Source of the DNA: Selaginella moellendorffii
Taxonomy: Eukaryota; Plantae; Lycopodiophyta
DNA: 57,225 nt
Assembly (NCBI RefSeq): GCF_000143415.4
Contig: NW_003314466.1
Coordinates: forward strand, 1-57,225
Direction of reading: 5' to 3'
A program made the translations under genes and the position numbers. The notes under the pieces were generated by a model, which saw nothing but the letters and a program-made list of their open reading frames with translations, was not told where the DNA came from and ran no database searches. Below are positions 8,051 to 41,493 of this stretch, one piece after another. Numbering within the stretch: the first letter of the stretch is position 1; each line of letters starts with the position of its first letter.

Positions 8051-8314
8051 TTAGTACGGTATCTTAGCTAAATGTGGACCCCAACCCTATTATACTCCCT
8101 TTTTCACAAGTTATCATTGAAGTGCACCTTAATAGCTACATTTAATGCTGCTTTATAGTTGATTGAGGTCCAACATATCACCTTGCCCCGAGTCCAAGTT
8201 TGTAAGCTTGATATGAAGGCATGGAACACATCCATGTCGCCCATATCTATGATAAGGATCCTCTTGGTTGTAAACACATTCATATACTCTTGAATAGTTT
8301 TTGTCTATTTTAGT

Positions 8315-22709: not shown

Positions 22710-23495
22710 TAATTGCCTAGGGCGAAGTCGTTGGTTCACCAAGCTAGATCTTGCTTTTGAGTATTGGCAAGTACCGATGGCCAAAAATGATATTCTTAAG
22801 ATTGCTTTTCGTACACCATTTGGTTTGTACGAGTTCTTGGTGATGCCGTTTGGTTTGAACAATGCTCCAGAAACTTTCCAACGGATGATGGATGAGGTTC
22901 TTTGTGATATGCCAGAGGTGATTGCTGACTTCATTGATGATGTCTTGATTCACTCAAAGGGGATGTGGGAGGAGCATATTCGTGATGTTTGTAAAGTGTT
23001 GGATCGGCTACGCGACATTGGTTTAAAGCTAAAGCAGTCAAAGTGTGTGTTTGGGTCCAAGGATACAGCTTATCTTGGGTACCGTATTTCTCATGAGGGT
23101 TTGCAAGTTGATCCTGACAAACTTGTGGCTGTTCTAAAGTTCCCTACTCCGAAGTGTGTGAATAATATGCAGTGTTTCTTGGGCAAGGTGCAGTATCTCA
23201 GTTGTTTTGTGGATCATCTTTCTGATCACACTACACCATTGCGAGCATTGCTGAAGTCATCAACATCATCTTTCATCTAATCTCTGGATTGTGAGTGGGC
23301 ATTTGGGGATCTCAAAGAGCTATTGACGACTCCTCTAGTTTTGGCATATCCTAACTACACTCGACCTTTTATTTTGCGCGTGGATGCTTCTGACATTTGT
23401 CTTGGAGGTGTGTTGATGCAAGAGAGCTCGAGTGTGCCTGGTCAACGCCATCCTATTGCGTATATAAGCCATACATTACAACCAGCGGAAATGAA
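22710..23495 (+). mobile_element. Ty3/gypsy RT-RNaseH fragment (host of the DNA-transposon cassette)
   Basis: AFRTPFGLYEFLVMPFGLNNAPETFQR, FIDDVLI, PVLAYP-like LVLAYPNYTRPFILRVDAS. Stops abruptly at ~23495, and pol-like sequence resumes at ~39120. Confidence 0.9.
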
Positions 23496-23770
23496 AAGTG
23501 TAACCTCTTTCTTCTCCTTGTCATCGTCGTCCAATTTCTTTCCATCCTTTTAATATTGGCTCAGTTGCTCTGAGTCTAGGTGGAGCCCAAGTCCCCATTC
23601 AATCTTTACTTTCCCCTTATTAATAAAACAACTTCGTAGACTTCCAATAACATGCTGTAACACTTCTAGTATAATGCAAATCCTCTCAAAGAATTGTCTT
23701 TTAATATTAATACAATGGCATGGAACCCCATGCCATAATAAGTTACATTTTTAAATAAATACATGCCATC

Positions 23771-24655
23771 TCAGACTGTTATTTTTTGCCTCCAACGCCT
23801 ATACAATAATCTTGGAATTTCATCACTCTCCACACTATCAGGATTTAAACCCAATAGTAATGCCATCTCTTCTCTAATACGTCCACGCTCATGTTCAGTG
23901 GTCGAAGAACCCATCCGGTTGAGCAGATTATGGAGATGCGGATAGTGCATGGCTAGACAATATACATGCCATAAATGATGACTGGTGTCTGTCCGATCAA
24001 ATGGCTTCGGATATACTGTTCCATCTGCCATTTGGTTGATTTCTGCAGCCACCTCCTGGACTGGCCGGTTCTCTATCACCATCGCTCCAAGCCGTTTTGC
24101 AAGGTCCCCCAGAACATACGGTTTCTTCTCCCTAGTTTCCATACTGCAAGAGATGGGGTCCACTGCATATGTGTGCGTGTTCGCTGCAGTTTTAATCGGC
24201 GAGTCATCGATGATGAGGATTTCACTTGACCTAGCAGTCCGGTTCATCACTACAGCCTCTGGCTTGATGAAGATGGGCTTGCTACCCCTCACATGGACCA
24301 TAGTCAAGCAATCCTCCTGTGTTAGGAGAAAGTCAAATGGTAATATTACTCGCGTCTGATCATGCATCATCTGTAGCAACGTTAATGCATTGTGGCGCAT
24401 TATGGATGTCCAAACTCCCAATTGCAAATTGAACCCGGCCCTCTGTTTTAAGTGTCGCATGGTCATTATTAGATCCCGCAGTTTCTCCCGTGTGATTAAT
24501 GTGAATCTGTCTCTTTTGACCAACTTGCGACCACAGGCTTTGGAGGGTGCAGTGACATTCGAGGACGAGCCACGCTCATGGGAGAAAAGGACACCGTTCA
24601 GATCAAAAACGATACAGTACCTTCGCCGTGACTCTGAAATGAAATGCGTTAGCAT
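23771..24655 (-). CDS. FCP1/NIF-like HAD-superfamily domain protein (possibly an exon of the upstream gene)
   Basis: 294-aa open frame with HAD motif I variant IVFDLNGVL, motif II GVWTS, motif III FIK and motif IV LIIDDSPIK. Confidence 0.72.
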   Translation of the reverse strand: MLTHFISESRRRYCIVFDLNGVLFSHERGSSSNVTAPSKACGRKLVKRDRFTLITREKLRDLIMTMRHLKQRAGFNLQLGVWTSIMRHNALTLLQMMHDQTRVILPFDFLLTQEDCLTMVHVRGSKPIFIKPEAVVMNRTARSSEILIIDDSPIKTAANTHTYAVDPISCSMETREKKPYVLGDLAKRLGAMVIENRPVQEVAAEINQMADGTVYPKPFDRTDTSHHLWHVYCLAMHYPHLHNLLNRMGSSTTEHERGRIREEMALLLGLNPDSVESDEIPRLLYRRWRQKITV

Positions 24656-26587
24656 AAAAAATGGTACAAGTCAATTTTACCATCTACAATATTAGCGAAT
24701 GGTGCTCCCGATGGTCGTTGAGAGGGTTTTGGTCGAGGAAACGTGAAGGGCGGAAATACTCTCCTCTGCAATGTGGGGTCAATCGCATCCGATGGCGTGT
24801 GGGCACATGCCATTTCAGCTGTAGACTCTGGTACAACTGGCTCAACAGTGGCATGGGGTGGTTCCGATGGCGTGTGATCACACGCCATTTCAGCTGGTGC
24901 CTCCGTTGGCAAAGTGGACATGACCGAACAGGCAGTAGGGGCGGTGTAGGGAGGTTCCAACGGCGCGTAGTCAGACAATTGGGCACACATTGAGTCCGTT
25001 GGAAATGAGGATACGACCGGCTCGGCGGCTGGGGCGGCCTCATGCGGGTCCAATGGCACCTGGTCACCGTCAGTTGGATACGTGGAGAAGATTGACTCAG
25101 TGGTATGGGCAGCATCAAGTGGAGCGTGGTCAACTTGCTTGGCGTTGATATGGATAGTAGCCTCCACCAGCTCTGATGACTCTTGCAGGCAAGTAGAGTC
25201 CACTGGCGGATCCATATGCATGTCCAAATATCTCCCTTCGATTGAGATGGTATCCTCCCGTGCTACTAAAAACAAACTCATTAGCACATTGAATCGACTA
25301 TACTGTATTTACCATCAACTGCTATTGAGGAACTAGGACCGATATCACTTGGGCGCACTGCTGATTCTGAAGGATTGGACATACATTTCAACCCTTGCTT
25401 GGCACTATCCTTCCTCGACACTAAAGGTTAGAGTTTGTAAATTCAACTGAATAATCTCTACTTACCATTTGCTCTGCGACCTACATGGACAATGTTAGAA
25501 ATGGTAAAAGGTTAGGAATGGATGTACTATTATTTACCTGATGGTTTGTCTTGTATGACCTTCCTCCGCTGCTCTTTGGCCACCTCAGGCTGGCCATCGT
25601 CGTCATCATCGTCGTCGTCGTTATTGTGATCGTCACCATTGTGAGGGCCATCCAAGTCCTCTTCGTCCTCCTCTTCTTCGTCCTCCTCTTCTTTGTCCTC
25701 CTCTTCATCCTTCTGCTCTTCCTGCTCATTATCTTTCTCTGGCTCCTCATCCCCCTCCTGCATTTCTTCCATAGGCTGCTCAGGCTGGATGGCTTGTTTT
25801 TCCAGGACCATCTTGGGAAAATCATCTGGCTGAGTCTCCATCTCAAAATACAAGACATCCATAGCCTGTTTTAGTGCGTGACCTAGGACCGTATCCTCAC
25901 CCGACTGTCTTAACATGGTTTCTGCACGTTCTTGCACCCTTCGAAGACGACGAGATGAGAAAAACGTGGCCCTGACTTGAAAAGCATCCCTCATCCATTG
26001 TACCTCTCCATTGAGATTGGGGAAGGGGAGTCCGCCATAGGAATCTGAGTCAGGAGGTGGTGACTGCCTGCTTTCACTCAGCCCTTGATCTGCAATGAAT
26101 GGCATGAGCACACACGCCATAACCCCGAGGCATTACCTATCATCTTTTCGTTGCCCTTCTTCCTTTTCGAATCAAACGCCTCTGATCCCGACGACTGTCC
26201 AACGTGCTTTCGCTTTTTATGACCACTATCAGTTTGAGCTTGGCTGGTGCTTGCCTGTTTTGCCTTTGAAGAAGTGTCTCCTGCAAGGAATGGCATGAGA
26301 CCACACGCCATTGCAAATATAATTTGTACCTCCTTTTTTCGTGTCTGTTTGTCCTTTTTCGACGCGCCACCAGTGTGCTTTTCAGTCCTCGTGTTTGAAT
26401 ATTCATAACTATCTATAATCAAAATGGCGTGAGGCCTCACGTGACCTTACCTTATGCAGGTTGTGAGCTCGGCCCAACATGGGTATCTTCAACAGTAGCT
26501 GTTAACGCCGTTTCAGCATCTGGGGGTGGCCACGCTCCTGCATACAGAGCTTGTGAGATAACATTTAAACTTAAAGTGCGTACTCAC
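24649..26587 (-). pseudogene. Low-complexity acidic and Pro-rich exons continuing the ParB-like gene
   Basis: GT-AG introns at 26538-26587, 26413-26450, 26281-26329, 26090-26136 and 25481-25538 link ORFs 26078-26440, 25530-26120 (E/D-rich) and 24649-25287. One splice phase is unresolved. Confidence 0.55.
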
Positions 26588-26606
26588 CAGGTTCGCAGAG
26601 AAGATA

Positions 26607-29105
26607 CTATTTTTCTTTGGCAACTATAATTATATGCTCCATTGAAGTCACCTCTTCAATGGAGTTTGTCACCGCAACACACGGGACACCCTTGAGTAGT
26701 GCGGCTCGAAAGAATAGTCCGCCGCAGTTGTACTCGACAACGCATTTGCCCTTGGAGTCGGAAGCAGGTGACCCACCCGCTATTGCGTTGAAGACCCAGC
26801 TGAGCATTTCCCATGCTGCACCTGGAGCTTTCTCTGGATTCGAAAGCTCCATAGCCGTCTTCAGTTCCTCAGGCACGGGTAAATTGACCTCCCTCAGATC
26901 AATTCGATCGGCCTTGTCGAATGAAGCTGGGAAGTCACTCCAATCCCACTCTACTGCAGGACCAATAACAAGGGCGAGTGTGAAGATGCGGACATTCGTC
27001 GGTATCTTCTTCTTAGCCATTATCCCATGGATCTCCCGCATCTCCTTGCCTTTCAACCGAGCCTTCACCTCGTTCAAGGCCTTCCAGAACTTGTGATAGG
27101 ATTCGGAGTCGTAGATCATATAGTGGACTGAAGATTCCACCTCCGCAAGTCCCACCATTAAGTCAATGATGGAGCTGACTTCGTCTGCATGAGTGATCTC
27201 CTCGTTTGTGAAGTCCATCACACAAAAGATGTTCTTGACCTGCTCATCTCCGCGGGAAACGATGCTCCTCCACCTTTGATCCTCATCCGAATTCACGTAT
27301 ACCCGGTAAGGTTCTCGATAGGCCTCTGCTGCGGGGTCGAGCTGTTTCTGAAGCCGGCGGTCGACATCAATCTTAATGAAATTTGGATACTGATCCAACT
27401 TCTCAGCTTTACTTTTCGTGGCATCCCGCAGCAGATCGATGAACTTGGGGGCCCCCTTCACGTACTCGTCGATGTCTTCATTAGACAAATCCAACGCTTC
27501 CATCATCTCTTGCGTGGTGTCGATGCTCACCCTCTCCACGGCCACTTGCTCGAAGATCCAATCCTTCAATAGCGCACGAGCTCTCAGAGTCGTGCACAAG
27601 TCCTCGTATGTCACAATATGGCCGGGAGTCATTTTGGTCTTGTTGAAGACTACCTCACCACGTAGAAGAGCATTAGCCACTGTCAGAAGGTCGTCATCGC
27701 CTAGAGACCGCGAGAAACGCAAGGCGTTGAGCTTCAAATCATTGGGCTTCCGACTGTCCTCCACACCCATTGAGTTTAGTAACTCCCCGTCATGGTACCT
27801 CCTCAGCACATCTACCCATTTGTCAAAAATAACTTTTGTCGCGAGTAGAATGTTATGGATGCTGAGTGTGTCATTGACCCCCAGTGTTTTCGAGAGAAGA
27901 CTCGAGAATTCCTGCAATGGAAATGGCGTGAGGCCACATGCTATGCCACATGCAACGAGGCTTACCTGCCAGGCACTAGTTGCTAGTGCATGTCCTTGTC
28001 TTGGTTTTTGTGGCTTCTTCAGTTGAACCCAGAGCTTCCGTGTTCGTGCCAATGTCTCGTGCAGACCCGATTTGTAGCACGTTTCTTGCTTGACATTCTG
28101 CGCGTGGGAGATGTATATGATAGATCGGAGGGGCGAGTTGCCTTTTATCAGGCGGACAACTCTTGTCTTGAAGACTTTCTTCACCTCCTTGCCCACCATA
28201 ATATCCACAACTATCTCTTGCATCACCAAGCTAGAATGCTGCCCAGAGACGGCATAGAACCGGATGTTCTGATCGTCCAACACCTTCCTATTGATCAAGT
28301 CTGGAAACCTCGTCTCGCCCTTCATTGTTCGGTAGTAGGGGATCACGTCTGCGATGTCGGGTGTTACTAGACTTGCCAACATCTTCTGCTTCAGTTTCTC
28401 CACCCACTCATCAGATACTAGCCTGTGGTTGTATTTGCTTTAGATGTCGATACGGCTCACGTCGATTGTATATACTTTGTTGGAATAGTAACAAGTACTA
28501 TTATCTGCGATGATTTTTGCTACCTCTTCTTGCTCTTTCTGCTCTTTGCGGCTCTTCTTTTTGGTGGGTGTAGTGTTCGAACCCGAGGCAATGGCATCAC
28601 CGAGTAGCTTCTTTTTTGGAGGAGAGTCGGACGTCGGCCTGAGCTTGACCACCCTTTTCTGCTTCGGGGTAGTTTCAAGATCGACCCCCTTCCCCTTCGC
28701 TTTCCGAACTGGAGGCATTCTCAACGGCTCAATGTTGGAATATAGTTTTTGAACATCGCCGTAGGTGAGGTCCGTGGATTCCATGTGATCTTCATAGACC
28801 CGCAGCGTCTTTGAAATTGTGGGCCTCCTGGACAACCTCTCCCTAGCTCCCTCTAGGAATTCCTCATAGCCGCTGCCCCCCTCCGGGAAGCCGCTAGGAT
28901 GTGCAAGGTGGATCTTGAAGGCAGACGCTGTCTCTACCACAAGTGCCAGTCCATATTCTTGCATGGAACTACATGGAGTGTCTGTCACTTGGATGAGGAT
29001 CCCCATGCATTCTTTTCTCCCACCATCTGTGTTGTACAGCCTCAGATCCTCGCCTTCCATCCCGAAAGTCCAACTGGTGAGCTCCTCCCCCTTCTCTGCA
29101 TCCAC
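26607..29105 (-). pseudogene. ParB/Spo0J-like NTD + HTH-like segment fused to a degenerate amino-methyltransferase-like domain
   Basis: ORFs 28440-29105 and 26607-28403 are one frame split by a single TAA. Motifs IDVSRIDI*SKYNHRLVSDEWVEKLKQKML, FYAVSGQHS, IIYISHAQN, LSKTLGVNDTLSIHNILL, and C-terminal CVVEYNCGGLFFRAALLKG. In-frame 54-nt intron at 27912-27965. Confidence 0.6.
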
Positions 29106-29499
29106 ATTGACAATGGCTGGAAGAAGAACGCAATTCCTCGCCTATTAAGAAATGCACAACAATTAGAGCTGACAGATGAAAAGCTAGCAACTGGAAATAA
29201 CGTGAGGCCACACGCCATTCACCACTGCATCAGATGTCTTGAGGCTGCATCCTAAGATGGCGTGAGGCTACACGCCATCTGTAACCGGACTGCACTCGAG
29301 AGCCTAATCGGTGCATGCCAATGTTGCTACTGAATGGCATGTGGCCTCATGCCATTTTCTACTTGGCCTAAAAGACTTACCATTTGAAGCCGAATGGAGG
29401 CGTGACAACCAGACTTGCTGGCGAATGTGCACTGTGTGTGCAGCGGATCGTAGCAGCAAGGCTACTCTGCCACTTACAGTTGGAGAGTGGCGCTGAAAT

Positions 29500-29935
29500 C
29501 TCCCAGGACGCGTGTGGGTGGCGAAGTGGGCGGCGGAGTTGGCGGCGAAGTTACAAACTGGGTGTGTCTTGAAGTGGATGCCGATGCACACGAGCGTGAT
29601 GCGAGCGCGAGTGTGATGCAAGCGCGAGTGGACGCCGATGCACACGAGAAATCTGTAGAGAAGGTAGATGAGCGCGAATGTGAGCGTGATCACGAGTGGG
29701 AGCGCGATGCGAGCGCGAGTGTGCGAGCGCGAGTACGAAGCAAAATGCAAAACCTAACCTCACACGCGCGAGATGTCACGACAGTTGGTAATCCCGCAAC
29801 GTCATCATTCCTCGGACTTGGGTGCCACCATTAATTTCTAGATCGCCGCGCGCATGCATGCACGTGAAATCCAAAAGAAATCCGCAACGTCATCATTCCT
29901 TGGACTGCATGCACGCGAAATCCAAAAGAAAGATC
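29500..29935. repeat. CpG-rich short repeats (GAGCGCGAGTG; duplicated GCATGCACG.GAAATCCAAAAGAAA), probable promoter region of the ParB-like gene
   Basis: Repeats are directly visible ~400-800 bp upstream of the ATG at 29105; the promoter role is inferred. Confidence 0.55.
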
Positions 29936-30642
29936 ATGATTAGGATATCATTTAATACCTTCGCTATATTTATACCATGCATAATTGGATATTCCAAAGC
30001 ATCTTGTATTTCCAAAAATGCCAGATGTTCAGCTAAATAAATTGTCAGAGGATTTGATGTGACGTTCAAGCGTGTGGGCTCATGCAATTTTGATCCCAAA
30101 AAATGCACCAAAAAATGCTCGGCGTCATCTGGCGTTATCTCTTGAATGGCGTGGGGCCGCATGCCATTTTCAAGGGCACATAGGAGTATATTTCTAGAAT
30201 ATTCTGACATGCGCGAGATTGTTTTGAGTTTTCTGGAGATCCAACCGTTAGATCGCAACTAGATTTTACAGAATGGTATACAATGTCCTTCTTGATGACC
30301 CTGCAAAGAAGCATCTCGATCGGACACCACATGAGACCACACGAGCCTTACAATGTTTCAGAGGCATTTGCCATAGATCCGACAGTTATTTTGCTCCAAG
30401 ATTCTACAGTTTGGTGTGCATTGACCTTTCCATCAACACTGCAAAGGGATATCACAATCAGATGTGGGATCACAAGAAACCAACTTCACTAACTCTGGTT
30501 TCACCAAGATCTACGTAAGGAGTTATGAAATGAAAGGACCCTCTCTATTGAAATGTGTTTATGGTCCTAGGGGCATTGTGACATATCAAAGGATTTTGTA
30601 TCAAGTTCTGTATTTGCATGTTTATCAAGCTACTGAATTGCT

Positions 30643-30666
30643 AAACCCTAAACCCTAAACCCTAAA
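30643..30666. repeat. Plant telomeric repeat (AAACCCT)x3, telo-box-like
   Basis: AAACCCTAAACCCTAAACCCTAAA. Confidence 0.85.
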
Positions 30667-31872
30667 CATGTGGCAAATGCTGCGTGAAGAAAGATGCCCT
30701 TTCTGGGCAAATGCTGTAAGAGGCAAATGCCAAGCAGATGTATCTCAGGCTAGCGAAGGGGACAAACGAAAGCTAGCTATAAACATGACGGGATGCAAAT
30801 AGATTACTAGGCTGGTCCTGCGAAAATCAAAAACCATAATTGAAAATATTGAAAATGCAAAAAGAAAGGTTTATAATATTTTTGAATTTTAAGCAACCAA
30901 AGGAATGTAAGTAGGGCATGTGTTTGTAAGTTTAAAAATGCCTCAACCACTTAAATTCCCAAGTAAATAAAGCTGTTTCTATTTTTGGTACAGGTAAACT
31001 TTATAGCGTGTGGGCTCATGCAATTTTGAACCCAAAAATGCACCAAAAAATGCTCGCCTAGAATTATTCTTTGAATGGCGTGTGGTTTTATATTGCCATA
31101 AATGGACGTACACACACAACATAATTATTCCTTTACACGGCGAATAATCTTGGCGCGGATCACTGAAACGGCATGGCAAAGTTCGAATCACTGACATGGC
31201 ACAGCTGGATCGAGGCAAGGACATGATGTGACAAAGTTCAACCTCCGACAGCAAAGTCTAGAAGCTACTCAGTTTGAAATTTGTCAGAGGAATCATAAAA
31301 TCTGGTTTGTCAAAGGATTTGATGTGACGTTCAAGCGTGTGTTATTTTTGAATTCTCGAACTCATTCCTAGGTCTATCATTTTTGTGCGCTGTGTTCTTG
31401 GTTCCGCTGAGCGCAGTGAGCGCTGCTTGTGTAAGCGGCATTGTGAGCTTTGGTTTATGCGTCTACAAGCGGTTGTGGCATTGCGAGTGCCATTGCAAGC
31501 GGCAATTTATGCGAGTGGCAGTTTGTGCGAGCGGCGTTACGAGCAGTTGCGGTGTTGTGAGCGGCGCTACGAGTAGTTGCGGTGTTGCGAGTGGCACTGT
31601 CTTTGGTGTGGCTACCGCTTCCTCTTGATATTCGGCACTTGTGCTTCCTGGTATGTTCACCATGGAATGGCTTAGGACCACATTTAGAAATGGCATGAGG
31701 CCACATGCCATCTTGGGCCTTTGCAATTTCATGGCTAGCGTATCGTCATGTATGTTTTTACTTGCCTGCAGCTATGTGTATATCAAGATGGCATGAGGCC
31801 TCATGCCATCTTTGGCCCCTGCTAGCCTATTGCCATATTCCTTTTGCCTTGCTGCAACTGTATATATTTTTG

Positions 31873-34684
31873 GTTAAGCAGATCGACTAGGCCGTTTTCG
31901 GTACATTCGTCTGAGGCATAGGATCATCCGCCCGTAACCCGGTACCGACCATGACCATAACGATTTCCCTAGACAATTCCTATGTCACCTCCTACAGTTT
32001 GGGTGTCCGGGGGGTACCTGTATCATGGAAGACGAGGATTAGTAATGCAATCTCCGCTAGCTCTATCTCTCATTTTGTGAAAGTACAAAGCTAGGTCTCA
32101 AAACTTAACTGAGATTTGCACGACTGATGCTCGCGAGCCAATGTACTCAGGTACATGTCCGGGCCGCACATCAGAAGTGACTTCCAAAGATTAGAGCTAA
32201 GGAACATGCTCAACCTGATCGCTATCCGTTGACTCATGGATCTCGCCGTCTGGACCAGTCGCTGTCATCCCGTCTTTTTTCTAAGCGGATGATTAGAAGC
32301 TGGAACAGTCGAGAGTACAAGCACTACCTGGGCAGATTCAGTAAGAACCCCTTGTGTCGCCGTGGTATTTAGTTCCAGCGCTCTGACCGAGAGAGATTCC
32401 TACAGGCCAAGGGTAAAAGAACGCAGCAAAACGAATCGTTTGTACCCGTTTTTGCGTGGCCAGGAATGCGGTAGTGAGATTCCTCGCGACCTTAGTGGTG
32501 GGTGTAAGCTCATTTTGAGCTATCCCCAAACAAGCACTTCGTTGGCGCTGCTCATTCTTGCGGTGCGCAACGAAGCGGCTGTTGATCCTGGAGTGGGCGA
32601 GAAGTGTGCGTGGTTGTGCTAGCGCACAGCCTTGCAGCGGCCCAAGATTGCTCTGCTTGTGGATGCGCTCCTGGAGAATGCGGCGGCGGCGGATGCAAGC
32701 GAGAAACCCTAACGTTAGGGTTTTTCCCGTCGCTTCATACCTTTCGGTGTGAGAAAATCCAGCGCCCGCAGCCATGAAGTCGAATAGCTATAGCTTGTAA
32801 TTAGGTTTGCCAATCCGTACGGCGTGTTTCTTCGCGCGAGATTCTGTGAGGAATCCAAGGTTTTGTTTTTTACCATGCCACGTCTACTCATGTATCCCAT
32901 TAGTTTATTCATGGGAAAACAGAGTTTTCTGTAAGTAAGGTTTCCTTTAAAAATTTGTTTTTAAGGAAGACCTTGCTGTGGTTAAGGCGTGGGATCTGTC
33001 TCAGAGTGAGAGAACAGCAACTTGTGTTGTTTTTTAACTTTTATCAATCAAAACACAGTTGTAGTCAAAGGTGCGCTTGTGTTTTTTAGTTGAGCGCGTA
33101 ACCAAGGACTGCATGGTAAGTTTGGGGGAACTAATTCTTTTGTTGTTCACAATCCAAAATGGCATAAATATCGAATCTATTATGTTTCGATATGATGCTA
33201 AATTGATGGATCGTCCTGTCTAGAGGACAGAGTTCCTGGTGCTCAGCTTGAAATTGCTGAGTCGTCGAGCTGTGGTGGCCTATTGGCTGGTTCTCTCCAG
33301 ATGTCAAAGAGAATTTCCAAGACTGCTTGTACCGGTGTCAGGGGGCTGGTGAGAATGATACAATCCAGACCACTGAGGATGAGTTGTCTCAATGCATAGC
33401 AATGGAATCCTTTTTCCACGAAGCCTTCAACGAGATTATCAATCTCGAGGATGACACCACCGGCGGTATTAATCAAATAGAAAAGCGCAAAGACTTGCCC
33501 CAGGATCACCTTGGATGAGTTTGCAACGGGCCGGTTTGAATCTCGATGAATGTACAGCGAGACTTTGAATGGAAGTGATCGGCGCTTGTCATATTTGGTG
33601 GTTAAGAAGGTACCATCAACTCGTATGATCTGAATCTGAAGGCTCAAGAAGTGAGCGGACAGATTCACGAGTGAGCCGTCCATGTTCACGAATGGATTAT
33701 CCATCTCATTCTGCATGGCCAGGAAACGTAATGGATATATCCAGAACGGATTTCCTTCGGATTCGACTTGATCGGGGTCAAGGAATCGGAGGATCATGGG
33801 GTTATTCATTGACACCAGATCGTCCATGTATCGGAACGTATGTTCGAATAAGCACAGCAGATCATACCGGCCTAGACGAGCGAGTCGAGTGATAAAGTTA
33901 TACTCGAAATAGAATAGGTACAGGTTACACCACAGAGGCGAGCACGAGAAGCCCATAGGAATCCCTCGGACTTGTCTCCATACTCTATCACCCAGCCGGA
34001 CATATGTGTTCCGGATAATGAAGTGATTTAGCTCGATGACTTTTGCTAGATCCATTCTGGTGGCCTTCACTGATGAGTGGCGTAGAGGTTTCCATTCGGC
34101 CTCAAGCTCGCCGTTCTTTTTTTGAATCAGAAAAAGGTCCTTATGGAGGTGGTTTTGGTGCGCGAAAGCCAAATTGACGAGGTTTGTCATGGCTGTCGTG
34201 AGGCCTTGATCTCCCTCGAGGGGGATGGCTTCGTAGCACTTTGTGATATCTCCCGTATAGATCGTGGTGATCTTGTCGGGGAGATTAATTGCGAACTCCT
34301 GTGTGGATCCAAGGATCCAGCACGCGTTCGTTTTTCCTCCAAAGAATTTTTCCCGTGCATAGAAATCATCGGCTACGTTTTGTAGCGCCTCCTGTATTCC
34401 TTTCAGGATAGCTGTGAGGCAAAATGTGATTTCAGAGAAGACACATCCATCCGCGTTCGTTAACCAGCGCATTTTATTCTTGTGCGCATTATAGATTCCC
34501 ATAAGGTAAGGGAGATCTGGTTTCTGTGGCGGGAATTCCTGTAAGGGTGGTTCACCGAGCAGTTGTTTTACAACTTGCTTAGGCTTTTCAGGGACATTAT
34601 TGTCCGAGACTACTAGTGAAAAGTCGTCACTATTCATCCGTGCAAGCACTTGCTCTCGGGCCAGCGTTTTGCAAAAGAAAGTGG
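31873..34684 (-). mobile_element. 5'-truncated Penelope-like retroelement (Naiad/Chlamys-like RT)
   Basis: Bounded by a 123-bp direct duplication (31750-31872 / 34685-34807, 2 mismatches). Contains the RT ORF and a ~1.4-kb 3' region. Confidence 0.85.
33243..34684 (-). CDS. Penelope-like reverse transcriptase (uninterrupted, N-truncated, no C-terminal GIY-YIG)
   Basis: GDITKCYEAIP, QVRGIPMGFSCSP, FRYMDDL, HFLSL, YDKRRSLPF...SNRP. The tracked start at 34739 lies in the duplicated target DNA. Confidence 0.88.
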
Positions 34685-34722
34685 GTATGTTTTTACTTGC
34701 CTGCAGCTGTGTGTATATCAAG

Positions 34723-34914
34723 ATGGCATGAGGCCTCATGCCATCTTTGGCCCCTGCTAGCCTATTGCCATATTCCTTTCGCCTTGCTGCAACTGTATAT
34801 ATTTTTGTATGGGTGACTAGTCACGCACACAAAAATATATACAGTTGCAGCAAGGCAAAAGGAATCTAGCCTCAGGCTAGCAGGGGCCAAAGATAGCGTG
34901 AGGCCTCATGCCAT
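34723..34914. repeat. 192-bp near-perfect inverted repeat (hairpin) capped at both ends by the 22-bp palindrome
   Basis: Symmetric about GTGACT|AGTCAC (34818/34819); the arms pair with few mismatches. Confidence 0.92.
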
Positions 34915-35093
34915 TAATGGTACCACTAATGGCATGAGGGCTCATGCCAATTTTGTGAATGCAAAATTTCACGTGGGTGTCTATAGCATGTTTGAATAAT
35001 GGCATGTGGCCTCATGCTATTTGGTATGTTATGATTTAGGCCATTCTCCAATCATTTTTTGTATGGTCTTAACTTCTTTTCTGCACTTTCAGA

Positions 35094-38000
35094 ATGGCCT
35101 TCAGGGTTGGGGAAAATGTTTACATTTTGAATGGTGGGAAGAGAGTTGCAAAAGGGACCCTTGTGTCTATGGATCGGAATTTTGTTATACACTGTCAAAG
35201 GCTTGGGGAAGGCAATGCTGCTGTATCAGTAGAGACTGTCTTTCATGGGAATGTGGTTGCTATTGAACGAGGAGAGATGGTCGTCGGGGTAAATGTTGTT
35301 GTTGCCTTGAAAAATCTGCAGAAGAAAGCAGATGTTGGGAACAGCGCAAGTGCGACGCATGTTCCCTCCGTGGATCTTAAGAATCGTGCTACATGGATTC
35401 AGGCAAAGGTGTTTCTAAACAACCCCGAGGGGGAGGTGGTAGCTGAGGGCTTAGCCACAGTTGTCGAACCAAGAGATGCGGTTGCTAATCAAGAATTGGG
35501 CTGGGATGATATTGGAGTTGCGATTTTAAAGGTTGTTGACACAGAAGAAAACAGTCTGACTATTGGAAGCATTGTGCGGTGGAAATTGAGGCATTTAGTG
35601 TTTGAGAATGTGAAGGATTCACAATCAAACACCACTACAACTGATGACAGAACATCTCTTCATGGGAAAAGAAAGTACACCTTCCTAAAGCGCAGCCAAA
35701 GGGATCTGAGCAACGAACCGAAAAGGCAGAAAATGGCGATGGAGGTTCGAATGGTCTCGACAGTTGCTTGTTGCAAGAGGAGGTGCTGTCAACATGCTGA
35801 TTGGGATGCTATTGAAGAGGAGAGAGCAAGATACAAGACATTGTCCTGGAAGGTAGCTCGCAATTTTGTGTATGAGGCATTACGGTCATCTGTTGATGCT
35901 TCAGAACATCAGGTGGGGGGCATGGTCTTCCTGAGGGGTTTGGTCTGCATGAAGGCATGGAGAATCATTTATGGAGTCCCTCGAAGCACATTCTACAGAA
36001 TCAAAACTGAGTTCGAGGAACAAAGGGTTCAACAGGCAGTCCATGGGAACGACGGTACGCACAAAACCAGGGGTCATGTTGTATATGGAGAGGCAATCTT
36101 CAAGAGGTTTGTCGAGACATGTAGCGAGCAGCAACCACATAAAACCCGCCTCTTGGAAGATGGAACACGAGACACCCAACGAGTTCTCCCTTCCATGTAT
36201 ACCAAGGGGGCCATATTGGAAGATGTGAATCGGGAACTCCAGAGTAATGGCTACAGGAAGCTGAGCCAATCTAGATTTAGTAGATTGTGGAGCAACAGGT
36301 TCAGGGATGTGAGTATAGGAAAGTACTCCAGCTTTTCAAAGTGTGACGAGTGCACTGCTATCAAAATGGCTTTGTCGAAGAATTCTTGCAGCGCTCAAGA
36401 GCGAGAGACGTTGGTTAGAAGGCAGCTCGACCACAACATCGAGCAGAGAAGCTGCAGGACTGCATATTATCATAACAGGATTCTCTCCATGGAGAGACCT
36501 GACTCTTACCTCTGCATCATCCACGACAAAATGGACCAGAAAAAGACGTGCTTACCTCGACTCAATCCTGCCCCCAAGGCAATCTCTTCATCCATGCAGC
36601 TGCCTGTGTCTCTGTTTGGCATAATCGCTCATGGGCATGGTGCCTAGAACTATGGGAACTTCTTTGTACCTCTATGGGGTGGCGGGGGTGCAAACATGAT
36701 GATTGCGTCCCTAGCAAAACACTTAAGGTCTCTGCAAAGTGCGCAGACTGAGCTGAACGGCCAATCCTTGCATAAGGCCCTTGTTGATTGAACCCCATAC
36801 AGGGTTCAGCTGGAGGAGGAGCAAAGGCTTGCAGTATCGCGTGGGGCCCCATGCCATCCCAGTGAATATGTTGGCCGTCAGATTGTAGGGTTATCACGTG
36901 AGGCCTCATGCCATTCCGACGAGGCTGGTCGCCCGGTGAATGCACAGCCTCATCCAAACGAAGCAGAATCTCAAGGAAGTTCTTGCGGCCGATGTGGCCT
37001 TCCACCCCATCTTCTGCTCCAAACAGACAATGCTGGTAGTGAGAACAAAAACATGTACGTCTTCGCGTACTTGGCGATGCTTGTTGCCAAAGGCATATTT
37101 GAAATGGTTACACTTGGCTTTCTCATGGTTGGGAACACTCATGAAGACGTCGATGCCATGTTCAGTCACCTGGCAGAGTCCCTCCAGCGATCCAATGTCC
37201 TCACCCTCCCACAACTCTACGATGAATTCCAAAATTGCATCAAAGGCACTGTTGAAGCTGCACTTGTGACAGAGGTTCCAGACTTTAAGGGGTTTGTTCT
37301 TAACTGGCTACATCAGGGATGGATCCAAAACGCTGATTGGCCACTCCAAGCCTCTTCAGTTTCATTTCAGCATGCGTGACGGTGCTCCAGTGATGAGGTA
37401 CAAGATGAGAGAATGGGACACACTATGGCTGCCAGTGGACGGCATTGAACTCTTCAAGAGAGATCCCATAACTGGGGAACCTATGATTCCTCAGGGTTCC
37501 CCACGGCCGATGCACCCGGATGGACTCAAAGACCAGGAAAGTATAGTGGCCGGGATTAGACAGCATATTGCCTTCTGGAAGAGGGGGTTGGTGTTTGGTG
37601 GAGAATCCTATTTTAAGAGGTGCAAGCCTTTGCTCGAATACTGGGAGAAGATTATATCTGCTATCCAAAATGGGCCGGTTGTATATGAAGAATTGGAAGA
37701 GTCCTTTTGGCCAGAACCCAGAGCACCAGATAGTAGCGGAACAATGTCCCCTGGAAATGCAGTGATAGATAACGATGTTGAGGATCACTATTGTGGGCCA
37801 AGGAACAAGAAGCTGGATTCAGCATTCAATCCAGTACAGGTCTGCAAAGGAATGCTCGTGCTTGTCAGACCCAGTAATAAAAAACAAATGATATGGGTGG
37901 GGCGCTGCATCACTGATGCAGAGGAGGACACGGAAACTAACTCCTTCAATGTAACTGTGGAGTGGTTCAAGCCAAGTTCCGGATATACGAAGGATTGTCT

Positions 38001-38239
38001 AGAAAAGAGATGGGTGCTGAATCCAAGGGATCCCAACATGAGCATATCGGTGGATAATGTTGTGCATGGTTGGATGCGGAAGCAGAGTGCCACCATCACC
38101 TTGCCAAACCATGCAAGAGATGCAGCAAGAGCATTCATAACCCGGGTTCAAGGTGAGATTCATTAATATTCCTTTACTAAGTTTCTAATGTATTTTATTT
38201 CAAGGTGAACAATCCGAATCTAAATCAGAGGAGGCGTGA
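35094..38239 (+). pseudogene. Sola-like DDD transposase (DUF7869-type core)
   Basis: FSKCDEC, LCIIHDKMDQ, LLLQTDNAGSENKN, FLMVGNTHEDVDAMFS. Same frame 35094-~37300 with stops at 36645 and 36788, a frameshift near 37300, and a last intron 38154-38204 followed by a short terminal exon. Confidence 0.8.
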
Positions 38240-39119
38240 TGGCATGGCGTGATGGCGTGAGGCATGACACCAAAAAGGAGGTGTCCACTAGCGCTTAGGC
38301 TTATAATGGCGTGTGCCCTCATGCCATTTACTTGATCACCAAATACCTTTTTCCCTTTGCACTAGTATATCTTAATACCGGTCTGAGAAATAGAATGGCA
38401 TGTGTCCTCAGGCCTTTTACTAAATCACCTTTGAAAGAAATGCAAGCCTCTATGTCATAAAAAAAAGGTACTAGAGAAATTCCTTAATAATATGAATGTT
38501 ATTTAGTTTCATGAAAATACACTAAGGGTCAAATGAGTTAAATGACTTCTCCAGACTAGCAATGCCTCTTGCTACACCTTCACAATTAGATTCGTTAGAA
38601 AAAGATAACATTGAATAATATCTAAATGTTCTCACCATTAAGTTATATGTCTAGCTAATAGGAATGACGTTCATCTTGGAAAGCTCACCACACGCTCAAT
38701 GAACAAACAAATAGTGTGTGCGCGCATGCCATCGCTCTTCTTTAGCTTCAGATTCGACTTGTTCACCTTGACAATGAGATTTATTATACAACTAGATGGA
38801 CTCAGTCTGGACACAAAGTCACCGCGCTAGTCACCATGCCCCAGATATGTCTAGCCCCTGGACAAAAAACATATAATTTCACGTCATTTTCAAATACTTG
38901 AAAATTTGTACCTAGTCCTATTTTACTGAATAAATCCCACTTTAACGAAATAGAGCTTCCTTACACTCTATGAAAATTTACTAAATATGAAATGGCACTA
39001 GATTGGTCCGTATCCATTTCCTTCTCTGTTTTAATGTGCTAATGTTTCTTTTACAACAGCCAATTTGTACTTTATCTTGGATTGTAACCATCTAAGAGTT
39101 CCAGCCAACTTTTCACATG

Positions 39120-41493
39120 CAAATTTGTATGATGGATCTGTTTATGATGGATTTGAATGAGTTCCTGGTTGCTAAGGCTACCTCTTTTGTGGTCCTAGTA
39201 GCATTATAGTACATTATAGTGTACTTGGATTCAGGCAAGTTCCCAACAGATTCCTTACAAGCGCAACAAAAGGCATTGAAGATTCGAGTATAGGAGTTTT
39301 GCCTTCTTGACGGACATCTTTGCACCATAGCTACTTTTGGCCTCAAATTCACCAGCATATCTTAGACTATGCAAATGTGAGACACAAATCCGTAAGCCCC
39401 AAAGTGGAGCCAAAAGGGTGCCACATGGTGGTGGTCGAAGTGGAAGTCCAATAAGTGTAATATGTTTGAACCAAAGACTCCAACTTGGAAAGTTGAGAGT
39501 GGGAGTGGAACTCCAAACAAAGTGCTCGAGAAATGAACACAAAGCATTTAGTGAATGAATCTCTAAAAAGGGACACAAGAAGGATTGACACATGGCAAAT
39601 GTCATGATGCATGGAAGTGTTAGGAATGAGTCCAAAAAAGAGTCCAAGAAGGAGTTCGAGATAGAGTTTGATATAAACTTGAGATGGACCCAAGATGGAG
39701 TCTGAGATGGAGTCTGATATAGACTCAAGATGGAGTCCAAGATGGACCCGAGATGGTGTCCAAGATGGAGCTAAAATGGAGTCCAAAATGGACTTGAAAT
39801 GGAGTTTGAGATGGACCTAAGATGAAGTCTAAGATCAAGTTCGAGACGGAGACCGAGATGGAGTCAAAGGTCAAGACCCAAGATGGAGTCTGAGGTCAAG
39901 ACTCGAGATGGAGTCCGAGGTTGAGGTCGAGGCTGAAACTAAGACTGAGACCGAGTCTGAGACTGAGCCCAAGACAGAATTCGAGTTTGAGTTTGAGTCC
40001 AAGTCTGAGGGTGAAAGCCATAGCGATCATCTCCTAGACCCTAGGGGGTTTGGTGAGCTCCAAAAATATAGTAAGAGGAGGACTCCAATAGAGCTAGTTT
40101 AGCTAGGAAATGCTAGTGTGACCAAAGAAGGTTATACCCATGTGTTGGGTGATGATATAACCATTAAAAAGTCCAAGGCTAGAGTGAATACAGACACACA
40201 AATAGGGTAGTTTGGTAAAGTGTTTAAGAGTTAACTCTAACTCCTTTAGGAGATTGAATGGTCGATGCTCCCAATCCAAATGTGAATAGCACTACCTACT
40301 TCGATATCACATGGCTCATCAAAACCTCATTCTAGCCACATGGTTAGGGCATCTAAGGGCAAGAGGTGGGGAGAGTACCCACAAGGTTTGTGTAGGGTTA
40401 TGGTGTTTCAAAATGTCTTCCCAAAATCCCAGACTATAGAAAGGAAAAGGAATAATCCTTTAGTGTAGTGACGAAGGATGTGGTCACATGGTGAGGAAGT
40501 CCCAGAAGTTAGTGGGACTTAATGGTTGGGCCTTTAAACCTTAACCCAATAGCAATGTTAATGAGCATGGCCATGGATGGAGAGGGATTTGGTGGGAACA
40601 GAATAAAGGACATTAGGGAAGGGTGTTCCTCACATCTCCAGACATCCTAAGGGCTAAGGTGTGGTCAAAGGATGACCACTCATGTATGAATGGCTCAGTC
40701 TTTTGAGAGACGTGACTATGATGTAAGTGGTTTTGGACTACTGATGTGATAAGGGTGAATGGGTATAGGCTTAGCATTACAGGCTGATATATCAATGGTG
40801 TCAATCATGGGATCAAACATGTAGAACACTTGGACCAAGTGCAAAGGCTAAGTGGCATAGATGTTATTCATGGGGCTAGCATGTCCCCAAGTCAGGAATA
40901 AAACTTATGGAGTTTGGGAATAAAACTCCTCCAAGTGGTCAAAAGTGGGGTTAAGTGGCTAAAGTAGAATGGAAAAAATTAGTCACTTACAACAAAGGTA
41001 TGTAAATAATGCCAACAGTTCAATTCAAAGCTATGTTCAATGCCTTCCTTTCCAGCTTGTCACTTCTCTAGGTCTCTGTTTTTAGTGGGGACTTGACTTT
41101 GTTAGCCCGATCAACCCATCAAGCTCAAAAGGATAGCAATATATCATGGTTGTAATGGACTACTTCACAAAGTGGTTGAGGCCATTCCTCTGCAACAAGT
41201 AGATTAACAGTCTACAACAAAGTTTATTTATGAGTACATTGTTTACTGATTTGGAGTTCTTGCAATTTTGATTTCCAATCGTGGCAGCGACTTCCTTGGA
41301 CAGGTGATGTAACATCTCTTCCAGCAGCTGCAAGTCAAGCACATGAAGAGCAGCAGCTACTATCTTGAGTGCAATGGCTAGGCAAAGTCCAGCAATAAGA
41401 TATTTGAAGACCATCATTTCAAAGTTTGTGGAGGATCACCCCAGGCATTGGCATGAGCATTTGGTTATGCTATTGTGGGCCTTTCAAACATCC
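39120..41493 (+). mobile_element. Continuation of gypsy pol (integrase), split by a solo LTR, ending at an assembly gap
   Basis: YLDSGKFP linker; WGLDFV...YIMVVMDYFTKW; LKTIISKFVEDHPRHWHEHL. Confidence 0.8.
39376..40991. mobile_element. Solo LTR, inverted relative to 19204-20923
   Basis: TGTGAGACAC...CACTTACA, near-TSD GCAAA/ACAAA, same (GAGATGGAGTCC) minisatellite. Confidence 0.8.

What the first reader, a model, noticed from the sequence alone, without database searches (positions are those of the whole stretch)
27800..28480. ParB/Spo0J-like protein in a plant transposon: candidate eukaryotic ParB-parS-like system
Seen: after reading through one TAA and removing a 54-nt intron, the sequence follows ParB motif order: IDVSRI..(NHR)LVSDEWVEKLKQKM; YAVSGQHS (cf. 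box II GxxR); VVRLI...SHAQN (cf. ALIEN); LHETLARTRKL; QEFSSLLSKTLGVNDTLSIHNILL (HTH-like). Established: ParB dimers load at palindromic parS sites and spread as CTP-dependent clamps. Inference: this protein recognises the 22-bp palindromes and coats its own element, for anti-silencing, transpososome assembly or retention of excised copies. The introns show it is a domesticated eukaryotic gene rather than contamination.
Basis: partly seen in the sequence, partly recalled or inferred. Interest (0 to 1): 0.9.

Follow-up and report, generated by a model that had tools for sequence, protein, structure and literature searches.

The report
ParB-fold accessory gene in plant transposon
A decayed cut-and-paste transposon in a land-plant genome carries a broken accessory gene with a real ParB/sulfiredoxin-fold domain fused to a dead DNA-methyltransferase-like domain, a design already reported in algal transposons, and nothing here shows that it works like a bacterial ParB-parS system.

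Summary
On the minus strand (29105-26607) one in-frame TAA (28442-28440) and a 54-nt GT-AG intron (27965-27912) interrupt a gene of about 810 codons. Relatives occur in a liverwort, lycophytes and unnamed plant samples.

An AlphaFold model of an intact relative matches solved ParB, Noc, KorB, PadC and sulfiredoxin N-domains (Z up to 8.8; the top 29 rows are all ParB/Srx). No sequence search recovers ParB.

Both box II arginines are replaced (GERR becomes GQHS). There is no ParA and no ParB-type C-terminus. The C-terminus is a beta-class N6/N4 methyltransferase remnant without the DPPY catalytic motif.

The 22-bp palindrome is real: 22 copies, all between 24792 and 38416. Two related elements carry different palindromes in the same intron. 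However, two elements with the same transposase family (DUF7869) and no detectable ParB-like gene also carry their own palindrome arrays. Which protein reads the palindromes therefore stays open.

ParB-like plus methyltransferase accessory genes are published for an Ectocarpus Sola1 transposon and for green algal transposons; a red-algal one pairs ParB with an oxygenase. This scan had already found the same element family on other pieces of this genome. Verdict: new member of a known kind, and this copy is dead.

The parts
28443..29105 (-). N-terminal piece of the accessory gene (221 codons). It holds an unassigned N-domain and a lysine-rich linker. Its last ~12 codons (KVYTIDVSRIDI, 28478-28443) form the first strand of the ParB/Srx-like domain.
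   Evidence: ORF list. No Pfam or PHROG family. Relatives P0008 and P0024 align to it.
28440..28442 (-). In-frame TAA nonsense codon inside the ParB/Srx-like domain. This copy is a pseudogene.
   Evidence: Sequence. tblastn of P0008 runs through it. Relatives have a sense codon here.
27966..28439 (-). Core of the ParB/Srx-fold domain. Box I-like NHR. SGQHS at 28247-28233, in the place of ParB box II GERR. Box III-like SHAQN.
   Evidence: Family alignments. HMM of the family domain hits this ORF at E 3e-51. Fold shown on the model of relative P0026.
27912..27965 (-). 54-nt GT..AG intron, in frame and without a stop. It holds one copy of the palindrome (27923-27944).
   Evidence: Sequence. Same exon end in relatives and in the annotated Selaginella protein. 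Palindrome scan. Not confirmed by RNA reads.
27315..27911 (-). Middle helical domain. It is the only confidently modelled part of the window's own protein. It has a winged-helix-like helix-helix-helix-hairpin element and may bind DNA.
   Evidence: AlphaFold model residues 190-380, pLDDT 71-93. Only weak structural matches (DdrC Z 4.1). Weak Pfam RIOX1_C_WH hit, E 0.03.
26610..27314 (-). Degenerate beta-class N6/N4 DNA-methyltransferase-like domain. The motif IV position reads DFTN (IFCVMDFTNE, 27230-27201) instead of DPPY. NPEKAP (26840-26823) stands for HPTQKP. YNCGG (VVEYNCGG, 26741-26718) stands for motif I FxGxG.
   Evidence: C-terminal family profile hits M.RsrI best in the PDB, E 0.001. 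Relatives L001 and L005 hit Pfam N6_N4_Mtase at E 2.6e-4 and 2.4e-4. P0020 links the window to L001. Language-model features point the same way. No [DNS]PP[YFW] anywhere.
24792..38416 (.). Span holding all 22 copies of the 22-bp palindrome ATGGCGTGAGGCCTCACGCCAT. The copies lie in non-coding stretches (upstream regions, introns, 3' regions of both genes) and show CpG-to-TpG decay.
35094..38163 (+). Transposase gene of the Pfam DUF7869 family, divergent from the accessory gene. It is broken by a stop at 36645 and a frame change near 37297-37319.
   Evidence: Pfam DUF7869 E 2.4e-34 on ORF 36936-37376. Homologues P0029-P0035. tblastn.
23774..24655 (-). NIF/CTD-phosphatase-like ORF downstream on the same strand. 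It may be a further part of the cargo gene. The catalytic DxDxT position reads DLNGV.
   Evidence: Pfam NIF E 1.7e-5. Translation. The Diphasiastrum gene model P0009 joins a ParB-like exon to NIF exons.

Best explanation
This is a pseudogenised copy of an accessory (cargo) gene of a large cut-and-paste DNA transposon.

Domain order of the protein: an unassigned N-domain, a lysine-rich linker, a ParB/sulfiredoxin-fold domain, a helical and possibly winged-helix domain, and a beta-class N6/N4 DNA-methyltransferase-like domain that has lost its catalytic motif.

It belongs with the ParB-like plus DNA-methyltransferase accessory proteins reported in an Ectocarpus Sola1 transposon and in green algal transposons. 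These ultimately resemble phage and bacterial ParB_N-methyltransferase fusions.

Shown here: the fold, the domain order, the loss of the catalytic and CTP-binding residues, the transposon context, and the decay of this copy.

Inferred: intact copies act as a non-catalytic, sequence-directed DNA-binding factor on their own element, for regulation, assembly of the transposition complex or protection from silencing. The element's palindromes are candidate targets.
For: - Fold. AlphaFold model of intact relative P0026: core pLDDT 75-93. In Foldseek against the PDB, the top 38 hits are all ParB/Srx proteins (best E 8.5e-3, probability 0.98). VIA-align gives Z 8.8 and rmsd 2.6 over 95 residues to M. 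xanthus ParB; the top 29 rows are all ParB/Srx, then Z drops to 4.0. AlphaFold DB gives E down to 2e-7, including proteins named ParB/Sulfiredoxin, DGQHR and one N-4/N-6 DNA methylase with this domain. The ESM Atlas shape search returns ParB_N and DndB clusters.
- Homology of the window copy to that family.
- Methyltransferase remnant.
- Catalytic motif absent.
- Transposon context: DUF7869 transposase on the opposite strand.
- Published parallels: PMC12477816, bioRxiv 10.1101/2025.02.11.637652, PMC4738411.
- Palindromes in the same intron of two other relatives, with different sequences.
Against: - No sequence method links the domain to ParB: Pfam, PHROGs, NCBIfam and PDB profile searches were blank or gave only stray weak hits.
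- The good model is of a relative that is 22-27% identical to the window. The window's own model is poor in this domain.
- The Foldseek E-values are weak, and Z 8.8 is only just above the tool's stated grey zone.
- DNA binding is not shown, and no ParB-type HTH was found.
- Palindrome arrays also occur next to DUF7869 transposases without a detectable ParB-like gene.
- No transcription of this copy was seen.
- Element ends were not found.
- The Sola1 label was not tested here.
Confidence: 0.62

Rival explanations
1. The palindromes are cis-sites of the transposon superfamily and are read by the DUF7869 transposase (or a host factor), not by the ParB-like protein. The ParB/Srx-fold cargo protein has another role, for example as a nucleotide-dependent regulator, a nuclease-like factor or a chromatin factor.
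For: - Two elements with intact DUF7869 transposases carry about 20 copies each of their own ~21-bp palindrome, mostly in arrays just upstream of the transposase gene: L007 has AGATCAGAC-N3-GTCTGATCT and L008 has TTATCGTCG-N3-CGACGATAA.
- Neither tblastn nor family HMMs find a ParB-like, middle or methyltransferase-like part in these contigs.
- In the window, four copies also sit in the 400 bp upstream of the transposase start.
- ParB/Srx domains have many non-partition roles (kinases, sulfiredoxin, DndB), as the hit lists show.
Against: - L001 and L006 carry palindromes inside the ParB-like gene's own intron, and no DUF7869 gene lies in the sampled flanks.
- L008 is cut at the transposase, so a cargo gene could lie beyond it.
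- Very divergent cargo genes could escape the HMMs.
Confidence: 0.3
2. One reading: a true ParB-parS-like system, in which the protein loads at the palindromes as a CTP-dependent clamp and spreads over the element.
For: - ParB/Srx fold.
- Box I arginine and box III asparagine positions are kept.
- Many dispersed palindromes are confined to the element.
- Related elements have their own palindromes.
Against: - Box II reads GQHS in place of GERR in all 12 aligned family members (T in one), so both arginines that ParB uses for CTP are missing.
- No HTH_ParB or ParB_C match was found.
- The C-terminus is methyltransferase-like.
- No ParA-like ORF was found among the element's larger ORFs.
Confidence: 0.06
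3. The resemblance is chance, and the reading frame is not a real gene family.
For: - No curated family matches the window's pieces.
- The exhaustive search gave only 10 weak hits.
Against: - The family spans a liverwort, lycophytes and several unnamed samples. It has six invariant residues, a shared intron position and the same domain order.
- The fold matches are consistent across four libraries.
Confidence: 0.02

Closest known systems
ParB-like + N4C/N6A DNA-methyltransferase accessory protein of Sola1-1_Ec32 in Ectocarpus (Dinatale et al. 2025, PMC12477816). [quoted passage not shown]
   Same: A two-domain protein with a ParB-like part followed by an amino-methyltransferase-type part. It is encoded on the strand opposite the transposase in a giant cut-and-paste transposon. 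The authors propose that it binds and modifies its own element.
   Different: Here the host is a land plant. The methyltransferase part lacks the catalytic (D/N/S)PP(Y/F/W) motif in every family member examined. A NIF-phosphatase-like part follows. Sequence homology to the Ectocarpus protein and the Sola1 assignment could not be tested with these tools.
PAG3 of Plavaka transposons in the red alga Bostrychia (Petroll et al. 2025, bioRxiv 10.1101/2025.02.11.637652)
   Same: An N-terminal ParB-like domain in a transposon accessory protein. Arrays of inverted repeats lie next to the gene and are proposed as its binding sites.
   Different: The partner domain there is a 2OG-dependent oxygenase, not methyltransferase-like. 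The transposon superfamily is different.
Phage and bacterial ParB_N + N6_N4_Mtase fusion proteins (Pfam PF02195 + PF01555), and chlorophyte or chytrid Dam enzymes fused to a ParB-type HTH (Iyer et al. 2016, PMC4738411)
   Same: The same domain order. Language-model features put the window protein nearest these clusters (scores 0.77-0.81, a lead only). The C-terminal profile hits the beta-class enzyme M.RsrI.
   Different: No Pfam-level match to ParB_N. The catalytic motif IV is lost and motif I is degenerate. The gene has spliceosomal introns and is much longer.
Bacterial ParB, Noc and KorB CTP-dependent clamps
   Same: N-terminal ParB/Srx fold (Z 7.9-8.8). Palindromic sites are nearby.
   Different: GERR is replaced by GQHS. 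No ParB HTH, C-terminal dimerisation domain or ParA was found.
DndB / DGQHR-domain proteins of the ParB/Srx superfamily
   Same: The motif SGQHS (DGQHT in P0007) resembles DGQHR. AlphaFold DB hits are named DGQHR. There is a DndB cluster in the Atlas shape search and a stray Pfam DndB hit at E 0.017 in 1 of 14 members.
   Different: The final arginine is missing. There is no significant sequence match. The context is a eukaryotic transposon, not a phosphorothioation system.

Membership tests
ParB/Srx-fold superfamily (domain level) | The three-dimensional fold superposes on solved ParB N-domains and sulfiredoxin | tested here: met
   Model of intact relative P0026. VIA-align Z 8.8, and the top 29 rows are all ParB/Srx. 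The Foldseek PDB top 38 are all ParB/Srx. AlphaFold DB and Atlas agree. The window's own copy is joined to that family by alignment; its own model was too poor to use.
ParB/Srx-fold superfamily (domain level) | Conserved glycine at the strand-to-helix junction (box II position), with box I arginine and box III asparagine in register | tested here: met
   G141 follows strand 134-140 and opens helix 142-155 in the model. G, Q, H, N, S and R are invariant, and the box I arginine is kept in the window (NHR). The register with ParB is inferred from secondary structure, not from a residue-level superposition.
Partition-type ParB (ParABS, CTP clamp) | GxxR / GERRxR arginines that bind CTP | tested here: not met
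   The family has GQHS (GQHT in P0007) at that place in all 12 aligned sequences.
Partition-type ParB (ParABS, CTP clamp) | Central helix-turn-helix domain that reads parS | tested here: inconclusive
   No HTH_ParB in Pfam. The middle domain is well modelled and has a winged-helix-like element, but there is no significant structural match.
Partition-type ParB (ParABS, CTP clamp) | C-terminal dimerisation domain and a ParA ATPase partner | tested here: not met
   The C-terminus is methyltransferase-like. No ParA-type family was found among the larger ORFs of the element that were scanned.
Partition-type ParB (ParABS, CTP clamp) | Cognate palindromic sites bound by the protein | not testable with these tools
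   The palindromes exist, but binding cannot be computed. Co-occurrence is ambiguous (versus 115, 116).
ParB_N + N6/N4 methyltransferase fusions (phage and bacterial; algal transposon accessory proteins) | ParB-like domain followed by a beta-class amino-methyltransferase domain | tested here: met
   The C-terminal profile's best PDB hit is M.RsrI, E 0.001, over HPTQKP plus motif I. Relatives L001 and L005 hit PF01555 at E about 2.5e-4, below Pfam's cut-off. The window alone gives no Pfam hit.
ParB_N + N6/N4 methyltransferase fusions (phage and bacterial; algal transposon accessory proteins) | Catalytic motif IV (D/N/S)PP(Y/F/W) | tested here: not met
   Absent from the window's pieces and from the ten relatives checked that reach beyond the ParB-like exon, and from all six frames of 23000-39500. 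The aligned position reads DFTN, DLRR, DATT or DSAN.
ParB_N + N6/N4 methyltransferase fusions (phage and bacterial; algal transposon accessory proteins) | Encoded inside a DNA transposon, opposite the transposase | tested here: met
   Accessory gene on the minus strand 29105-26607. DUF7869 transposase on the plus strand 35094-38163.
Sola1 superfamily of DNA transposons | Transposase homologous to curated Sola1 transposases | not testable with these tools
   Only Pfam DUF7869 could be assigned. No named relatives. No paper mentions DUF7869.
Sola1 superfamily of DNA transposons | Terminal inverted repeats and target-site duplication | tested here: inconclusive
   No terminal inverted repeats were found between 22.5-24.5 kb and 38-41 kb. 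The G+C step (about 0.49 inside, 0.33-0.41 outside) suggests an insert of roughly 24-38.5 kb.

The most novel reading that the evidence does not exclude
The ParB/Srx-fold pseudo-methyltransferase protein is a sequence-specific self-recognition factor of land-plant transposons. It reads the element's own palindromes, including those kept in the intron right after its ParB-like exon, and it co-evolves with them. If so, each transposon lineage carries a private protein-DNA address. That would be a eukaryotic functional analogue of ParB-parS built without CTP-clamp chemistry or methylation.
Probability: 0.3. Interest if true: 0.7.

Novelty: new member of a known kind. Interest (0 to 1): 0.45.

Why it matters
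Apart from sulfiredoxin, ParB/Srx-fold proteins are thought of as prokaryotic. Their presence as cargo of eukaryotic transposons was noted for algae only recently, and no function has been tested.

This locus and its relatives extend the design to land plants (liverwort, lycophytes and this genome). They show that the methyltransferase half can be kept for long periods without its catalytic motif.

They also offer a simple experimental handle: short palindromes specific to each element, some sitting in a conserved intron of the gene itself.

The counter-observation, that ParB-less relatives of the same transposase family also carry palindrome arrays, sharpens the question into a direct two-protein binding test.

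Tried and rejected
- **Sequence searches for ParB.** Pfam, PHROGs and NCBIfam on the window's pieces and on 14 family members, plus phmmer and profile searches of PDB sequences, gave no ParB. The only stray hits were weak ones to DndB (E 0.017) and DUF6551.
- **Word-indexed homologue search** with the 610-residue piece found nothing. The exhaustive search gave only 10 weak hits, of which two were spurious low-complexity matches (P0001, P0003).
- **Folding the window's own 610 residues** gave a poor model outside the middle domain. Foldseek and VIA-align searches of it were uninformative; beta-class methyltransferases appeared only among generic alpha/beta hits at Z 3.9-4.5.
- **Direct BLASTP** of the window C-terminus against the liverwort methyltransferase-like ORF found no alignment. 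The link had to be made through P0020 and a profile.
- **RNA-seq.** Three runs, each about 12% sampled, gave 0-5 diverged reads at the 5' edge only. There were no splice joints and nothing over the stop codon. The fourth run's contigs are fragmentary, and one starts inside the intron.
- **Terminal inverted repeats** were not found.
- **The Sola1 label** could not be tested: no names and no papers on DUF7869. A search for the paper that first described Sola transposons (terms Sola1/Sola2/Sola3/Zator, up to 2012) found nothing in the library.
- **MpDN4MT1** of Marchantia was considered as a relative. The paper mentions no ParB domain, and that enzyme keeps TSPPY. It was not pursued.
- **P0024 and P0025 loci** could not be fetched.
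Full report
**1. What is in the sequence**

On the minus strand an open frame runs from 29105 to 28443 and ends with ..YTIDVSRIDI. A TAA follows at 28442-28440, and the same frame continues for 598 further codons to the stop at 26609-26607.

Inside that second stretch, 27965-27912 is a 54-nt GT..AG unit. It is in frame, has no stop, and contains one copy of a 22-bp palindrome.

**2. It is a real gene family**

- An exhaustive HMMER search of 1.8 billion representatives gave only ten weak hits.
- Eight of them are true relatives, from Selaginella, the liverwort Calypogeia fissa, the lycophyte Diphasiastrum complanatum and unnamed assemblies.
- A profile search added six more.
- The N-terminal domain alignment has six invariant residues (G, Q, H, N, S, R), all kept in the window.
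- Relative P0008 aligns to the window by tblastn from 28772 to 27987, straight through the TAA (E 6e-13). The stop is therefore a nonsense change inside the domain, not a gene end.
- The relatives' frames all end at the same W-K/Q position followed by gt. The annotated Selaginella protein bridges the junction as EWQ-AS-EFESF. This supports the intron and shows long residence in eukaryotes.
- RNA-seq gave no reads over the gene, so neither expression nor splicing of this copy was seen.

**3. The fold**

No sequence method recovers ParB. Because the stop splits the domain, I modelled an intact relative (P0026) with a 14-sequence family alignment that includes the window. The core has pLDDT 75-93.

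| Search | Result |
|---|---|
| Foldseek vs PDB | Top 38 hits all ParB, Noc, KorB, PadC, sulfiredoxin or SbnI; best E 8.5e-3, probability 0.98 |
| VIA-align | Z 8.8, rmsd 2.6 over 95 residues to the M. xanthus ParB N-domain; top 29 rows all ParB/Srx, then Z falls from 5.5 to 4.0 |
| AlphaFold DB clusters | E down to 2e-7; includes entries named ParB/Sulfiredoxin, DGQHR, and one N-4/N-6 DNA methylase carrying this domain |
| ESM Atlas shape search | ParB_N and DndB clusters |

The fold claim is therefore supported. The caveat is that the model is of a relative that is 22-27% identical to the window.

In the model the invariant glycine sits at the junction of strand 134-140 and helix 142-155, as the box II glycine does in ParB. 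The family reads GQHS where ParB reads GERR, so both arginines used for CTP are missing. The motif is closer to the DGQHR type.

**4. The rest of the protein**

The window's own 610-residue model is confident only in the middle (residues 190-380). That part is helical with a winged-helix-like element and has no significant structural match.

The C-terminal third is a methyltransferase remnant:
- A profile of its last ~85 positions, which includes the window, has the beta-class N6-adenine enzyme M.RsrI as its best PDB hit (E 0.001). The alignment covers HPTQKP and motif I.
- Two relatives hit the same part of Pfam N6_N4_Mtase at E about 2.5e-4.
- P0020 links the window to one of them.
- Protein language-model features point to ParB_N plus N6_N4_Mtase phage proteins. 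These are leads only.

The catalytic (D/N/S)PP(Y/F/W) motif is absent from every family member and from all frames of the element. By the usual criterion the domain is inactive.

A NIF/CTD-phosphatase-like ORF follows on the same strand. Its DxDxT motif reads DLNGV.

**5. Context**

A DUF7869-family transposase gene lies divergently at 35094-38163 (E 2.4e-34). It is also broken.

The G+C profile suggests an insert of about 24-38.5 kb. I found no terminal inverted repeats and could not test the 'Sola1' label.

The element also holds a nested retroelement ORF. Its palindromes show CpG-to-TpG decay. This is an old, dead copy.

**6. The palindromes**

ATGGCGTGAGGCCTCACGCCAT occurs 22 times with at most 5 mismatches. 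All copies lie between 24792 and 38416, in non-coding stretches (chance expectation about 0.02).

| Locus | ParB-like gene | DUF7869 transposase in sampled span | Own palindrome |
|---|---|---|---|
| Window | yes | yes | 22 copies; one in the intron after the ParB-like exon |
| L001 (liverwort) | yes | no | at least 12 copies of GCCTCGAGAT..TCTCGAGGC in 35-bp arrays; four in that same intron |
| L006 | yes | not sampled (2.2-kb contig) | GGTCGAGACAGTCTCGACC twice in that same intron, once upstream |
| L003, L005 | yes | fragment only / not sampled | none found |
| L007 | not detected | yes (intact) | about 20 copies, AGATCAGAC-N3-GTCTGATCT |
| L008 | not detected | yes (intact) | about 20 copies, TTATCGTCG-N3-CGACGATAA |

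L001 and L006 fit the self-recognition idea. L007 and L008 speak for the transposase, or for the transposon superfamily as such, as the partner of the palindromes. The data cannot decide between the two.

**7. Comparison with what is known**

- Dinatale et al. 2025 (PMC12477816) describe a 1104-residue ParB-like plus N4C/N6A-methyltransferase protein in the Ectocarpus Sola1-1 element. It is encoded opposite the transposase. [quoted passage not shown]
- Petroll et al. 2025 describe ParB plus 2OG-oxygenase cargo next to arrays of inverted repeats in red-algal Plavaka elements.
- Iyer et al. 2016 list ParB-HTH-Dam fusions in chlorophytes and chytrids.
- I found no report for land plants in the searchable library.
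- Earlier notes of this scan describe the same element family on at least eight other pieces of this genome, and three follow-ups reached a similar reading. That is not independent evidence.

**8. Verdict**

- The ParB/Srx fold and the transposon context are supported.
- The ParB-parS clamp mechanism is not supported.
- The palindrome link is plausible but contested.
- It is a new (land-plant, catalytically dead) member of a recently published kind.
- This particular copy is a pseudogene.

Noticed in passing
L007:605-1439 and 7375-8145; L008:8098-9517: Two metagenome or assembly contigs with intact DUF7869 transposases (1100 and 980 residues). Each carries about 20 copies of its own ~21-bp palindrome, mostly in arrays just upstream of the transposase gene (58-bp period in L008). 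No ParB-like gene was detected by tblastn or family HMMs.
   Followed up: partly
window 27912-27965; L001:10460-10711; L006:~1690-1845: The intron directly after the ParB-like exon sits at the same position in three distant relatives. In each it houses that element's own palindrome: 1, 4 and 2 copies respectively.
   Followed up: partly
L002:10001-11425 (Selaginella moellendorffii, P0002, LOC9650508): A 451-residue relative that starts in the last helix of the ParB-like domain and keeps the middle and methyltransferase-like parts. It lies among ordinary host genes (ArfGap, VQ, SCAR), with no palindromes and no transposase nearby. It is either a domesticated gene or a relic fragment.
   Followed up: partly
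window 23774-24655 (-): NIF/CTD-phosphatase-like ORF on the same strand, downstream of the accessory gene. The DxDxT catalytic motif reads DLNGV. The Diphasiastrum gene model P0009 joins a ParB-like exon to NIF exons (motif DLDDI there), so the phosphatase-like part may belong to the same cargo gene.
   Followed up: partly
window 35094-38163 (+); L004: The transposase copy in the window is broken: a stop at 36645 where the 97%-identical Logan protein P0029 reads on, and a frame change near 37297-37319. Two palindrome copies (36836-36857 and 36893-36914) lie inside the stretch that P0029 translates.
   Followed up: partly
window 31788-31872 and 34830-34914; ORF 33246-34739 (-): An 85-nt stretch of the 192-bp hairpin upstream of the transposase is duplicated about 3 kb away. 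The interval holds an ORF with a weak reverse-transcriptase match (RVT_1, E 1.7e-5). This is consistent with a nested retroelement insertion.
   Followed up: no
window 12937-14866 (+), 22777-23277 (+): Retrotransposon gag, zinc-knuckle and reverse-transcriptase ORFs outside the element. These are ordinary LTR-retrotransposon remains.
   Followed up: no
AlphaFold DB hits to model mb67788e21eea: Many uncharacterised eukaryotic proteins share this ParB/Srx-like domain, at E 2e-7 to 1e-3. They include a large set with one accession prefix (A0A388...), one of them annotated as an N-4/N-6 DNA methylase and one with a Helitron-helicase-like domain. Accession prefixes suggest some may be animal proteins and some fungal, but the tool masks the organisms. 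The domain may be widespread in eukaryotic mobile elements.
   Followed up: no
window 24792-38416: Most departures of the palindrome copies from the consensus are CG to TG or CA. This is the pattern expected from deamination of methylated CpG in a silenced, old element.
   Followed up: no
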